Of a DNA stretch of 64,000 nucleotides, positions 30,453 to 33,400 are shown piece after piece. The notes under the pieces were generated by a model, which searched no databases, was not told where the DNA came from, and was given only the letters and a program-made list of their open reading frames with translations. How positions within the stretch are numbered: the first letter of the stretch is position 1; each line of letters begins with the position of its first letter. Source of the stretch: Macrostomum lignano (Eukaryota); NCBI GenBank assembly GCA_002269645.1, contig NIVC01000162.1, forward strand, positions 186,001 to 250,000, given 5' to 3'. A program made the translations under genes and the position numbers.

Positions 30453-33400
30453 ATGGCGGCCGCCCGCAGTCAGCAGCAGCAGCAGCAGGATCTGGCTGTC
30501 CAGGCTGGCCTAGTCAGCTCCCTAACCAGCCTGTTCTCGCAGAAGCTCAACTCAACCGAGGAGCTCAAAAAGGTGCCAGTAGTGAAGCCTGTGCCGATTA
30601 GATTGAGGCCCCAACCGCCGCCGGTCTCGCACCTGGGCTACACTCAGGTTGGCAAGCCAGCTCTGATTCAGCTGGTGCATAATTATTCACCGGAGTATAA
30701 CCAGCAGCACCAGCAGCACCAGCAGCAGGCAGCTTACGTCACTAAAAAGACGAAGTACTCGTCCAGAAGCGACTTGAACGGAGCTGGGTCAGGCCAGGCG
30801 GGGACGGACAAGTACCACCTGGAAGAGTGGACGGTCTACGAGACTCTGCCAGCCGACCTGGCAGCCACTTCAACTTCGTCCAAGTCGGCAGCCGAAGCCG
30901 AAGCTGAGCGTCGACGTTTGAAGGCGGAGTTTGAGGAGAAGCGCCGGCTTCAACGCGTCCAGCGGGAGCGGCAAAGGCCGGCGGCTCCGGCTGCGACGCC
31001 TGAGATGTTCACCAGAGAGGAGTGGACAGTCTACGAGACGGTGCCGAGCCAGCGAGTCCAGGTAACTCGGTCAGCTAGTTCCGGCGCTCACCGGACTGCT
31101 CAATTGAGTCAGCAGCAGCAGCAGCAGCAGCTGTACCGCTCGGAGAGCAGCGACTCTGTCCTTGGCTACCGGCGCTACTTGAATGACAGCCAACATGACA
31201 GCGGCAAGGCCACTCGCCAATCGACATCAACAAAGGCTACTACTGCTACCACTGGTACTACCAAGACTGCCCACAATGGCGCCGCAGTGAACAATAGTAC
31301 AAGACGCCCCGCCGCTTCCACTCCGGAAATCTTTACGGCGGAAGAGTGGACTGTGTATGAGACCATACCAGCCGTGACTTCCGGTCAGCAACACCAGCAT
31401 CAGCAGTATCGGCAGCAGGAGCAGCAGAAGCAGCACCAGCACCAGCACCAGCAAAAGCAGACTAAACGAAGCGTTCGTTGGACTTCGGACGAGGCGAAAT
31501 CCACCGCTAGACGCAACACGCCCGACATTTATTCGAAAGAGGAGTGGACCGTGTACGAGACGGTTCCCATAGTGACAGAGTCTGGAAACCATCAGCAGCA
31601 ACGGCAGAGTCAGAGACAGCTGGTGCACCAGCAACAGCAGCAGCAGCAGCAACAGCAGCAGCAGCAGCGGCTGTACAGAAGTCCCAGCCAAGAGTCCGTG
31701 ATTGGCTACAAGCGTTACCTTGACGACCGTCAGCAAAAGTCCAAAGCGGTGGAGTACAGCAGCAGCAGCAGCAGCAAGCGGCAAACCTATCAGTACGACA
31801 ACGGCCAGTCGCGCCAGCAGCCACGGGTGTCCACCAGAAGCGCCGAAAACCGAGTTGGCACCCCGGTGCGTACAGAGGAGTGGACCGTTGTGCGCCGCGT
31901 GCCGGCCGACTCGGCTGAGCTGCTGCTCAGCGGGCAAGTCGACAGGGCCAGCTGGCGAACTGCTGAGGCCGCCCGGCAACGGCAGACAGCGGCGAGTCCG
32001 GCTGGGTATCGGCGGTACCTGCTGGCCGAGTCCAGCAACAGCCTGGCGTCCGCAGGGGACTTTGAGCACCGCGCTGTGCCTGGTGAGCACCAGTGGGGAT
32101 GGCGGTGAATCTTGGAGGGGTTTGTGGTAGAGCTTTGGGTAGAGATTAGAGTAGAGACTGGAGTAGAGATTGGAGTAGAGATTTGACTAGAGACTGTAGT
32201 AGAGATTGGAGTAGAGACTGGAGTAGAGATTGGAGTAGAGATTTGAGTAGAGACTGTAGTAGAGATTGGAGTAGAGACTGGAGTACAGATTGGGGTAGAG
32301 ACTGGAGTAGAGACTGGAGTAGAGACTGGAGTAGAGCTTGGGGTAGAGACTGGAGTAGAGACTGGAGTAGAGACTGGAGTAGAGACTGGAGTAGAGATTG
32401 GAGTAGAGATTGGAGTAGAGATTGGAGTAGAGACTGGAGTAGAGACTGGAGTAGAGACTGGAGTAGAGACTGGAGTAGAGACTGGAGTATAGATTGGGGT
32501 AGAGACTGGAGTAGAGACTGGAGTAGAGACTGGAGTATAGATTGGAGTAGAGACTGGAGTAGAGACTGGAGTAGAGACTGGAGTAGAGACTGGAGTAGAG
32601 ACTGGAGTAGAGACTGGAGTATAGATTGGGGTAGAGACTGGAGTAGAGACTGTAGTAGAGATTGGAGTAGAGACTGGAGTAGAGATTGGGGTAGAGACTG
32701 GAGTAGAGACTGGAGTAGAGACTGGAGTAGAGCTTGGGTAGAGACTGGAGTAGAGACTGGAGTAGAGACTGGAGTAGAGACTGGAGTAGAGCTTGGGGTA
32801 GAGACTGGAGTAGAGATTTGAGTAGAGATTGGGGTAGAGACTGGAGTAGAGATTGGAGTAGAGATTGGAGTAGAGACTGGAGTAGAGACTGGAGTAGAGA
32901 CTGGAGTAGATATTTGAGTAGAGATTGGAGTAGAGATTGGAATAGAGATTTGTGTAGAGACTGGAGTAGAGACTGGAGTATAGATTGGGGTAGAGACTGG
33001 AGTAGAGACTGTAGTAGAGATTGGAGTAGAGACTGGAGTAGAGATTGGGGTAGAGACTGGAGTAGAGACTGGAGTAGAGACTGGAGTAGAGCTTGGGGTA
33101 GAGACTGGAGTAGAGACTGGAGTAGAGACTGGAGTAGAGACTGGAGTATAGATTGGGGTAGAGACTGGAGTAGAGACTGGAGTAGAGACTGGAGTATAGA
33201 TTGGAGTAGAGACTGGAGTAGAGACTGGAGTAGAGACTGGAGTAGAGACTGGAGTAGAGACTGGAGTAGAGACTAGAGTATAGATTGGGGTAGAGACTGG
33301 AGTAGAGACTGTAGTAGAGATTGGAGTAGAGACTGGAGTAGAGATTGGGGTAGAGACTGGAGTAGAGACTGGAGTAGAGACTGGAGTAGAGCTTGGGGTA

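What the first reader, a model, noticed from the sequence alone, without database searches (positions are those of the whole stretch)
30453..32082. Gln-rich protein built from two unrecognised short repeated motifs (EEWTVYET and LYRS.S..SV.GY.RYL)
Seen: HLEEWTVYETLP, TPEMFTREEWTVYETVP, TPEIFTAEEWTVYETIP, TPDIYSKEEWTVYETVP and TPVRTEEWTVVRRVP, plus QLYRSESSDSVLGYRRYLND, RLYRSPSQESVIGYKRYLDD and AGYRRYL, separated by poly-Q/T/S linkers. The peptide motifs are conserved while codons differ (ACG GTC TAC GAG, ACA GTC TAC GAG, ACT GTG TAT GAG, ACC GTG TAC GAG), which suggests selection on the protein rather than DNA slippage. Inference: a disordered multivalent scaffold. Acidic-x-x-V-Y-E-T-hydrophobic resembles tyrosine-kinase/SH2 docking sites, or the repeats may be beta-strand ligands. 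I do not recognise the family.
Basis: partly seen in the sequence, partly recalled or inferred. Interest (0 to 1): 0.7.

Follow-up and report, generated by a model that had tools for sequence, protein, structure and literature searches.

The report
Flatworm orphan protein with repeated docking motifs
This is a real two-exon gene for a very hydrophilic, mostly unstructured protein found so far only in Macrostomum flatworms; it carries five copies of a strictly conserved Trp-containing peptide (EEWTV..) and three of a second one (GYRRYL), so it most likely tethers several copies of an unknown partner, but the partner and the function are not known.

Summary
The ORF at 30453-32082 holds five EEWTV motifs and three GY.RYL motifs. 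They differ mainly at synonymous sites (4-6 synonymous against 0-1 replacement changes per pair in the 10-codon core).

It is exon 1 of a two-exon gene. Exon 2 is at 34242-34348, beyond an intron filled with a 12-bp satellite. The product is 578 aa, has no Cys and no membrane segment, and is 13.7% Gln.

The only relatives found are three copies of one Macrostomum lignano hypothetical protein, which have the same order of conserved blocks. A profile of the motifs scored against all 1.84 billion representative proteins found nothing else. Pfam, PDB sequences and the literature gave nothing.

AlphaFold2 models are disordered apart from one charged helix.

The motifs form a higher-order module, A-helix-A-linker-B. 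Linkers are replaced wholesale between species: poly-Q here, Glu/Arg-rich in M. lignano.

The best reading is a lineage-restricted disordered scaffold whose motifs are short docking peptides. These are probably beta-strands anchored by the invariant Trp. The phosphotyrosine/SH2 idea fits the pattern T.Y..[VIL] in 7 of 10 motifs. However, Tyr is not invariant, whereas Glu, Trp, Thr and Val are. No partner or function could be tested.

The parts
30453..32082 (+). Exon 1 (543 codons + 1 base), from the start ATG to the base before the GT donor
   Evidence: ORF. The start aligns with the start of the M. lignano protein P0001.
32083..34241 (+). Intron (2159 nt), mostly a 12-bp satellite (GTAGAGAYTGGA, about 163 copies, 32127-34091)
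   Evidence: GT at 32083 and TTTGCAG acceptor ending at 34241. Satellite. The M. lignano gene also has a single intron near the 3' end, between aa 647 and 648.
34242..34348 (+). Exon 2 (phase 1), encoding (D)WRRAGSDRSGLTESENPFHTGYHLARDNPIYSGI plus the TAA stop
   Evidence: Joining the exons gives 1737 nt, in frame, 578 aa. The C-terminal 21 aa match the M. lignano C-terminus NSNVFHQQFNVSRENPVFRG (tblastn; BLASTP E=1e-5).
36255..36361 (+). Second, identical copy of exon 2, inside an exact 911-bp duplication (33825-34735 = 35838-36748)
30507..30587 (+). Conserved N-terminal block N1 (aa 19-45, G.VSSL.SLF.Q....E.LK.V.V)
   Evidence: 15 of 27 residues identical to M. lignano, against 20% identity outside the blocks
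30633..30677 (+). Conserved block N2 (aa 61-75, LG[YF]T..GKPA.I..V)
   Evidence: 9 of 15 identical
30735..30776 (+). Conserved basic block N4 (aa 95-108, [YF]VTKKT.Y.SR)
   Evidence: 9 of 14 identical. AF2 draws it as a strand paired with motif A1, at low confidence (pLDDT 50-62).
30801..30851 (+). Motif A1 (GTDKYHLEEWTVYETLP)
   Evidence: 9 of 10 core residues identical to M. lignano
30879..30971 (+). Charged helix (aa 143-173), the only confidently predicted element
   Evidence: AF2 pLDDT about 86-88, and a helix again in the isolated module. It corresponds to the much longer Glu/Arg-rich segment in M. lignano.
30996..31046 (+). Motif A2 (TPEMFTREEWTVYETVP)
31131..31187 (+). Motif B1 (LYRSESSDSVLGYRRYLND)
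31320..31370 (+). Motif A3 (TPEIFTAEEWTVYETIP)
31518..31568 (+). Motif A4 (TPDIYSKEEWTVYETVP)
31671..31727 (+). Motif B2 (LYRSPSQESVIGYKRYLDD)
31854..31904 (+). Motif A5, a variant without Tyr (VGTPVRTEEWTVVRRVP)
   Evidence: The M. lignano counterpart TPFRVEEWTVTRQIP also lacks Tyr.
32001..32021 (+). Motif B3, short form (AGYRRYL)
   Evidence: aligned with VGYQSYR of M. lignano in the module alignment
34280..34342 (+). Conserved C-terminal block (ESENPFHTGYHLARDNPIYSG), containing NPF and NP.Y

Best explanation
The region is exon 1 of a genuine two-exon gene (30453-32082 and 34242-34348). The gene encodes a 578-aa protein that is Cys-free, very hydrophilic and net basic. It has no signal peptide or membrane segment, so it is presumably cytosolic or nuclear.

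The protein belongs to a family seen so far only in Macrostomum flatworms. It is largely disordered. What selection preserves is a set of short peptides:
- three N-terminal blocks;
- five 'A' motifs, [TP-acidic-aliphatic-aromatic-x2]-E-E-W-T-V-Y-E-T-aliphatic-P;
- three 'B' motifs, S.[DE]S[VI].GY.R[YL]L;
- a C-terminal NP.[YF] block.

The A and B motifs are arranged in a repeated module, A - helical spacer - A - linker - B, with a period of about 175 aa.

My reading is inferred, not shown. The A motifs are docking peptides that become short beta-strands on binding. The run W-T-V-Y-E-T-V is rich in beta-branched and aromatic residues and is closed by Pro. The invariant Trp would act as the anchor and the two Glu would steer the peptide towards a basic surface. 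With five A and three B sites on flexible or helical spacers, the protein could hold several copies of a partner, or a polymeric partner, together. The conserved Thr-Pro in front of most A motifs could be a proline-directed phosphorylation switch. The partner is unknown.
For: Real, selected gene:
- ORF, donor, acceptor and in-frame join.
- M. lignano proteins P0001, P0002 and P0004 have the same block order, and the C-terminal exon matches.
- In 120 codons of conserved blocks compared between species, 43 codons are identical, 43 are synonymous changes and 34 are replacements.
- Within the gene, the A cores differ by 4-6 synonymous against 0-1 replacement codons per pair.

Motifs rather than a domain:
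- Between-species identity is 56-90% in the blocks and 20% elsewhere.
- Linkers are replaced wholesale: poly-Q/T/S here, Glu/Arg-rich in M. lignano.
- Motif number differs between species.

Disorder:
- AF2 mean pLDDT is 41.8 with one confident helix. The isolated module also shows only that helix.
- GRAVY is -1.16, the best 19-residue hydropathy window is 0.98, and there is no Cys.

Module structure: the four modules from the two species align as A-linker-A-linker-B, with motif spacings of 173-180 aa.

Beta propensity and the Trp anchor:
- E(-2), W, T(+1) and V(+2) are invariant in 10 of 10 instances, and Pro(+7) in 9 of 10.
- AF2 draws A1 as a strand.
- The identical peptide EEWTVYET occurs by convergence within the folded domain of bacterial HemD enzymes.

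Family restriction: the profile search of 1.84e9 proteins returned only P0001.
Against: - No partner, localisation, expression or phosphorylation data could be obtained. The M. lignano gene ids are absent from the text and held supplements of the papers checked.
- AF2 gave no structure for A2-A5 or for any B motif, so 'beta-strand on binding' is a composition-based inference.
- Only two species are available, so per-position conservation rests on 10 motif instances that are not independent.
- The window's own species has no transcript evidence here.
- A multivalent scaffold is a broad class, and the specific claim about a Trp anchor could be wrong.
Confidence: 0.5

Rival explanations
1. Phosphotyrosine docking scaffold. 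The Tyr in E-E-W-T-V-Y-E-T-[VIL]-P is phosphorylated by a Src-type kinase, which favours acidic residues upstream and an aliphatic residue at -1. It then recruits SH2 proteins of the pY-E-x-[VIL] or T-x-Y-x-x-[VI] (ITSM-like) specificity. The C-terminal NP.[YF] would add a PTB-type site.
For: T.Y..[VIL] occurs 4 times in the window protein and 3 times in P0001, against 0.29 and 0.08 expected; 0 of 500 shuffles reached these counts. NP.[YF] is present at the C-terminus in both species. The similarity to Src-SH2 and ITSM consensus motifs is recalled from general knowledge and was not tested.
Against: Tyr is present in only 8 of 10 motif instances, and the last motif lacks it in both species, while Trp, Thr, Val and Glu are invariant. 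Docking scaffolds of this kind usually conserve only about 4 residues around the Tyr, not about 17. ITSMs sit in receptor tails, and this protein has no membrane segment. The enrichment of T.Y..[VIL] follows automatically from the repeat itself, so it is not independent evidence.
Confidence: 0.15
2. Self-associating structural protein. The acidic A strands pair with the basic strand VTKKT.Y.SR (block N4) of the same or another molecule, or stack with each other. Together with the Q-rich or charged helices, this would give a polymer, gel or condensate rather than a scaffold for a separate partner.
For: AF2 pairs 95-107 with 121-133 as a hairpin. N4 is conserved. The linkers are Q-rich.
Against: The hairpin has pLDDT of only 50-62. 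There is one basic strand for five acidic ones. M. lignano replaces the Q-rich linkers by Glu/Arg-rich ones, so Q-driven assembly is not conserved. The isolated module shows no strands.
Confidence: 0.12
3. Cytoskeleton-lattice binder. The regularly spaced motifs (about 65 and 110 aa apart, module about 175 aa) contact successive subunits of a filament (microtubule, actin or a flatworm-specific fibre), with the helices acting as rulers.
For: Regular spacing of motifs. A charged helix resembling a single alpha-helix spacer, greatly expanded in M. lignano. The protein is net basic, +20 here and +16 in P0001.
Against: Spacer lengths differ strongly between species (for example A1-A2 is 65 aa here and 131 aa in P0001), which argues against a fixed ruler. 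There is no similarity to any known filament-binding repeat in Pfam.
Confidence: 0.1
4. Not a functional gene: a chance ORF kept open by CAG-rich repeat DNA in a satellite-rich region.
For: The region is surrounded by satellites, and antisense ORFs exist.
Against: A conserved ortholog has the same block order and the same start and end. Synonymous changes exceed replacement changes in the conserved blocks. Splice signals are canonical and the join is in frame.
Confidence: 0.02

Closest known systems
Macrostomum lignano hypothetical proteins BOX15_Mlig023050g2, Mlig033590g1 and Mlig023050g1 (P0001, P0002, P0004)
   Same: Same family and almost certainly the ortholog. They share the N-terminal blocks, EEWTV motifs, DSV.GYRRYL motifs, a charged helix after the first motif, the C-terminal NP.[YF] block, a single 3' intron and the absence of Cys.
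   Different: Overall identity is 36-38%. Their linkers are Glu/Arg-rich and there is a long poly-Pro stretch, instead of poly-Q. Motif number and placement differ by one or two. Their convergent RhoGEF/WD40 neighbour was not seen in the window. They are uncharacterised, so they say nothing about function.
Multi-site docking proteins of tyrosine-kinase signalling (p130Cas substrate domain, Gab/IRS/Dok) and ITSM/Src-SH2 motifs
   Same: A disordered protein with many copies of a Tyr-containing peptide. T-V-Y-E-T-[VIL] fits T.Y..[VI] and pY-E-x-[VIL] (for the pattern count; the consensus motifs are from general knowledge).
   Different: There is no PH, PTB or SH3 domain. Tyr is not invariant, while Trp is. 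The conserved peptide is much longer than a typical pY site. There is no sequence homology.
Trp-based repeated docking motifs in disordered proteins: Pex5 W-x-x-x-[FY], GW182/TNRC6 W motifs in a Q-rich protein, kinesin-light-chain 'W-acidic' [LM]-x-W-[DE]
   Same: The principle is shared: several copies of a short Trp-anchored peptide on a disordered chain, Q-rich in the case of GW182, each binding a pocket on a folded partner.
   Different: None of the three patterns is present in the window protein: 0 matches each. Here Trp is followed by T-V, not by an acidic or small residue, and the context favours a strand rather than a helix.
Multivalent beta-strand-addition ligands (LC8/DYNLL partners such as ASCIZ; bacterial fibronectin-binding tandem beta-zipper repeats)
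   Same: The proposed mode of action is shared: repeated short strand-forming peptides in a disordered chain that add onto a partner's beta-sheet.
   Different: There is no TQT anchor: 0 matches here and 1 in P0001, which is at chance level. There is no sequence similarity. This is an analogy only.
Uroporphyrinogen-III synthase HemD (Pfam HEM4)
   Same: The identical peptide EEWTVYET(x)P occurs in many bacterial HemD sequences and aligns with ESITVYQTV of human UROS, PDB 1JR2.
   Different: It is a single copy inside a folded enzyme. The window protein does not match HEM4. This is convergence. At most it shows that the peptide can occur within a folded domain. That it forms a beta-strand there is recalled from knowledge of the HemD fold and was not checked here.

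Membership tests
Any Pfam-A family or repeat | Match to a curated profile | tested here: not met
   0 families at E<=1 for exon 1. 0 at E<=10 for P0001 and for the N- and C-terminal pieces.
Macrostomum 'EEWTV/GYRRYL' protein family (unnamed; P0001, P0002, P0004) | Same ordered set of conserved blocks (N1, N2, N4, A motifs, B motifs, C-terminal NP.[YF]) | tested here: met
   Alignment. phmmer E=6e-21 and 2e-21. The motif profile scores P0001 at 240 bits. C-terminal block.
Macrostomum 'EEWTV/GYRRYL' protein family | Conserved gene neighbourhood (convergent RhoGEF/WD40 gene downstream) | tested here: not met
   The neighbour is present at all three M. lignano loci. tblastx of those flanks against the window hit only repeats.
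Phosphotyrosine docking sites (Src-SH2 / ITSM type) | Pattern T-x-Y-x-x-[VIL] with upstream acidic residues | tested here: met
   4 of 5 A motifs here and 3 of 5 in P0001
Phosphotyrosine docking sites (Src-SH2 / ITSM type) | Tyr is the indispensable, best-conserved residue | tested here: not met
   Tyr is present in 8 of 10 instances, while E, W, T and V are present in 10 of 10. A5 lacks Tyr in both species.
Phosphotyrosine docking sites (Src-SH2 / ITSM type) | Tyr is phosphorylated in vivo and binds an SH2 domain | not testable with these tools
   Needs phosphoproteomics or peptide binding.
ITSM-bearing immune-type receptors | Motif lies in the cytoplasmic tail of a membrane protein | tested here: not met
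   The highest 19-residue Kyte-Doolittle window is 0.98 and the N-terminus is not hydrophobic.
Pex5-type W-x-x-x-[FY] repeats | Di-aromatic pentapeptide | tested here: not met
   0 matches in the window protein
GW182/TNRC6 W motifs | Trp flanked by small residues, [GSAT]W[GSAT] | tested here: not met
   0 matches in the window protein
Kinesin light chain W-acidic motif | [LM]-x-W-[DE] | tested here: not met
   0 matches in either species
LC8/DYNLL-binding motif | [TVI]-Q-T anchor | tested here: not met
   0 matches here and 1 in P0001, which is at chance level
Atg8/LC3-interacting region (LIR) | [EDST]-x(0-2)-[WFY]-x-x-[ILV] | tested here: inconclusive
   7 matches against 4.5 expected here (90 of 500 shuffles reach it), and 3 against 3.9 in P0001. 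The pattern is too unspecific to decide.
HemD / HEM4 | Match to the HEM4 profile | tested here: not met
   Only the heptapeptide is shared, and the window protein has no Pfam hit.

The most novel reading that the evidence does not exclude
The A motif (TP-x2-aromatic-x2-EEWTVYET-aliphatic-P) is a previously undescribed class of short linear motif. It would bind a specific folded domain of a broadly conserved protein. The Macrostomum-restricted protein carrying it would be a lineage-specific multivalent adaptor that rewires that conserved machinery, with the conserved Thr-Pro and Tyr acting as phospho-switches.
Probability: 0.3. Interest if true: 0.55.

Novelty: new variant of a known kind. Interest (0 to 1): 0.35.

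Why it matters
If the reading is right, this is a clean natural example of how a taxonomically restricted, disordered protein evolves. The linkers are exchanged wholesale (poly-Q against Glu/Arg-rich), while a handful of 10-19-residue peptides stay nearly fixed. That makes the motifs good probes for finding the partner.

M. lignano is transgenic- and RNAi-tractable, so the function is directly testable. Beyond that, the finding is of local interest: an orphan gene family in one flatworm genus. No link to a long-standing open question was found.

Tried and rejected
1. The word-index homology search with the full exon was swamped by poly-Q candidates. It was repeated with low-complexity runs removed and found only M. 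lignano proteins.
2. The word-index search with a 47-column motif alignment returned nothing, not even P0001. A local hmmsearch scores P0001 at 223 bits with that profile, so this negative is a limitation of the tool and was discarded. It was replaced by the exhaustive profile search.
3. Pfam searches at permissive thresholds and a PDB sequence search with the motif profile gave nothing.
4. Two AF2 models were too low in confidence for a fold search, so none was run.
5. Literature: the peptide strings gave only an unrelated thrombospondin-1 peptide containing EEWTV. The M. lignano gene ids were not found in the full text of any paper or in the held supplements of four papers, so there is no expression data.
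6. Synteny by tblastx of the M. lignano flanks against the window hit only satellites and microsatellites.
7. A degenerate DNA pattern for EEWTVYET in metagenome contigs found 15 single-copy hits. Thirteen lie in ORFs of a HemD-like context, and the two ORFs checked against Pfam are HemD. This was rejected as convergence.
8. Known Trp-based or strand-type motif classes (Pex5, GW182, KLC W-acidic, LC8) were rejected by pattern counts.
9. A WH2-like reading of the N-terminal helix followed by LKKV was considered from memory. It has no Pfam support and was dropped.
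Full report
**What is in the sequence**

EEWTV occurs five times, at aa 124, 189, 297, 363 and 475. The second motif, GY.RYL, occurs three times, at aa 238, 418 and 518, and two of those copies carry the longer form LYRS.S..SV.GY.RYL.D. Shuffling the protein 2000 times never gave a non-trivial 5-mer more than three times; the observed count is five.

The repeats are not DNA repeats. Among A1-A4, the ten core codons of EEWTVYETxP differ by 4-6 synonymous and 0-1 non-synonymous codons per pair.

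**Gene model**

Coordinate 32082 is followed by GTGAGC. The single M. lignano relative has one intron near its 3' end, between aa 647 and 648. In the window, a TTTGCAG acceptor ends at 34241. Joining 30453-32082 to 34242-34348 is in frame (1737 nt) and gives a 578-aa product ending ...ESENPFHTGYHLARDNPIYSGI*. This matches the M. lignano C-terminus ...NSNVFHQQFNVSRENPVFRG... (BLASTP E=1e-5).

The 2159-nt intron is almost entirely a 12-bp satellite. An exact 911-bp duplication (33825-34735 = 35838-36748) carries a second identical copy of exon 2. Either copy would give the same protein.

**Relatives**

The full-exon search found only two M. lignano hypothetical proteins, P0001 and P0002. A query with the poly-Q and other low-complexity runs removed added P0004. 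P0004 is identical to P0001 over its first 438 aa and differs entirely after that, which suggests a frameshifted copy of the same gene.

The alignment shows the same order of blocks in both species:
- G.VSSL.SLF...LK.V;
- LG[YF]T..GKPA;
- [YF]VTKKT.Y.SR;
- EEWTVYETLP;
- a charged helix;
- TP[ED].F.REEWTVY.TVP;
- S.DSV.GYRRYL;
- a further A and B motif;
- TP.R.EEWTV.R..P;
- a short GY..Y motif;
- the C-terminal block.

Identity is 56-90% inside these blocks and 20% outside them. In 120 block codons compared between species, 43 codons are identical, 43 differ synonymously and 34 are replacements. Half of the conserved residues therefore use different codons, so conservation acts on the protein.

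**How far the family extends**

I built a 48-position profile from the ten A or A+B units of the two species (alignment A3). I scored it with HMMER against all 1.84 billion representative proteins. Only P0001 reached E<=0.001, at 240 bits.

An earlier word-index search with the same kind of profile returned nothing. That is a tool artefact, because a local hmmsearch scores P0001 at 223 bits with that profile.

Other searches were also negative:
- Pfam gave no hit even at E<=10.
- PDB sequences gave none.
- No paper in the library contains EEWTVYE, WTVYET or GYRRYL. EEWTV alone appears only in a thrombospondin-1 peptide, from a cysteine-rich domain unrelated to this Cys-free protein.

A degenerate DNA pattern for EEWTVYET found 15 metagenome contigs, each with a single copy. 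Thirteen of the hits sit in ORFs of a HemD-like context, and the two ORFs checked against Pfam are uroporphyrinogen-III synthase (HEM4). One of them aligns with human UROS, 1JR2, and the peptide falls opposite ESITVYQTV. This is convergence. Its only use is to show that the peptide can sit inside a folded protein.

So the family is, on present data, confined to Macrostomum. The window is from a congener, or at least a relative, of M. lignano. This is inferred from 36-38% identity to the only hits; the species itself was not identified.

**Structure**

AF2 on the three-sequence alignment gave mean pLDDT 41.8.
- The only confident element is a helix at aa 143-173 (pLDDT about 87). This is the charged stretch after A1, which is expanded to more than 100 Glu/Arg-rich residues in M. 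lignano.
- AF2 also drew a hairpin between the conserved basic block (95-107) and motif A1 (121-133), but at pLDDT 50-62.
- The Q-rich linkers came out as low-confidence helices.

A second model, of one module with the four modules of both species as its alignment, again showed only the helix (mean pLDDT 54.6). I ran no fold search on such models.

The protein has no Cys, net charge +20, GRAVY -1.16 and no hydrophobic window above 0.98. There is therefore no membrane segment or signal peptide.

**Higher-order organisation**

The motif positions are A at 124, 189, 297, 363 and 475, and B at 238, 418 and 518. This gives spacings of 173, 174 and 180 aa between equivalent motifs. The four complete modules of the two species align as A - helical linker - A - linker - B. 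The window protein reads [A1-A2-B1][A3-A4-B2][A5-B3].

Linker length and composition are free. For example, A1-A2 is 65 aa here and 131 aa in P0001.

**Which residues matter**

Over the ten A instances:
- E(-2), W(0), T(+1) and V(+2) are invariant.
- E(-1) and P(+7) are present in 9 of 10.
- There is an aliphatic residue at +6 in 9 of 10.
- Tyr(+3) is present in 8 of 10, and it is missing from the last motif in both species.
- An aromatic residue sits at -5 in 7 of 10.
- Thr-Pro lies at -9/-8 in five instances, and at -7/-6 in the last motif of both species.

Pattern tests on the whole proteins:
- T.Y..[VIL] occurs 4 and 3 times, against 0.29 and 0.08 expected. This follows from the repeat itself.
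- The Pex5, GW182, kinesin-light-chain W-acidic and LC8 patterns are absent.
- The LIR pattern is at chance level.

**Interpretation**

Shown:
- This is a real, selected, two-exon gene.
- It is a genus-restricted family.
- The protein is predicted to be largely disordered.
- The conserved short motifs are arranged in a repeated module.
- The linkers evolve freely.

Inferred:
- The motifs are docking peptides.
- The A motif binds as a short strand, with Trp as anchor and the Glu pair for electrostatic steering.
- The protein is multivalent.
- Thr-Pro, and possibly Tyr, are regulatory phosphosites.

I put about 0.5 on this scaffold reading. The rivals are:
- a phosphotyrosine/SH2 docking scaffold (0.15);
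- a self-pairing structural or condensate protein using the basic N4 strand (0.12);
- a filament-lattice binder (0.1);
- a non-gene (0.02).

No expression or functional data exist in the sources I could search.

**Verdict**

The SH2 detail is only pattern-deep, and the non-invariant Tyr weakens it. The family is undescribed but already sits in public databases as 'hypothetical protein'. Its kind, a lineage-specific disordered protein with repeated linear motifs, is familiar. The interest is moderate.

Noticed in passing
window 33825-34735 and 35838-36748: An exact 911-bp direct duplication (offset 2013 bp). It contains the end of the intron satellite, exon 2 with its stop codon, and the start of the (TTGA)n array, so the gene has two identical candidate last exons. 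It could be a real tandem duplication or an assembly artefact in satellite DNA.
   Followed up: partly
window 29674-30186, 32127-34091, 34378-37885, 27838-28591: The gene is embedded in satellites. There is a 39-bp unit x13 ending 267 bp upstream of the ATG, a 12-bp unit x163 filling the intron, a TTGA-based array of about 3.5 kb after exon 2, and a 24-bp array next to the neighbouring GPCR ORF. Further arrays lie at 38744-39371, 39778-40127 and 41457-41753.
   Followed up: no
window 28562-29377 (-): A 271-aa ORF matching rhodopsin-family 7TM receptors (Pfam 7tm_1, E=1.2e-22). It covers about 190 of the 260 profile positions and is probably one exon of a GPCR gene divergent from the gene studied.
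   Followed up: no
window 17623-21657 (+) and 9397-10356 (+): A long ORF (1344 aa) with aspartyl protease, reverse transcriptase, RNase H and integrase domains, typical of a Ty3/gypsy-type LTR retrotransposon. A separate ORF has a retroviral-type aspartyl protease. Neither was analysed further or assembled.
   Followed up: no
loci L002-L016 (metagenome contigs): The exact peptide EEWTVYET occurs once each in 15 contigs. Thirteen lie in ORFs of a HemD-like context, and the two ORFs checked are bacterial uroporphyrinogen-III synthases (HemD, Pfam HEM4). One aligns with human UROS (1JR2), where the peptide lies opposite ESITVYQTV. This is convergence, not homology.
   Followed up: yes
loci L001, L017, L018 (M. 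lignano NIVC01003265, NIVC01000292, NIVC01002442): M. lignano carries three copies of the gene, each followed by a convergent RhoGEF/WD40 gene. One copy (P0004) is identical for its first 438 aa and differs entirely after that, which suggests a frameshift. The copies differ in the number of Glu/Arg-rich repeat units. This is consistent with the known recent genome duplication of that species.
   Followed up: partly
tool behaviour: The word-index protein search with a short motif alignment collected only 550 candidates and missed P0001, which the same profile scores at 223 bits locally. Negative results from that route with short profiles should not be trusted.
   Followed up: yes
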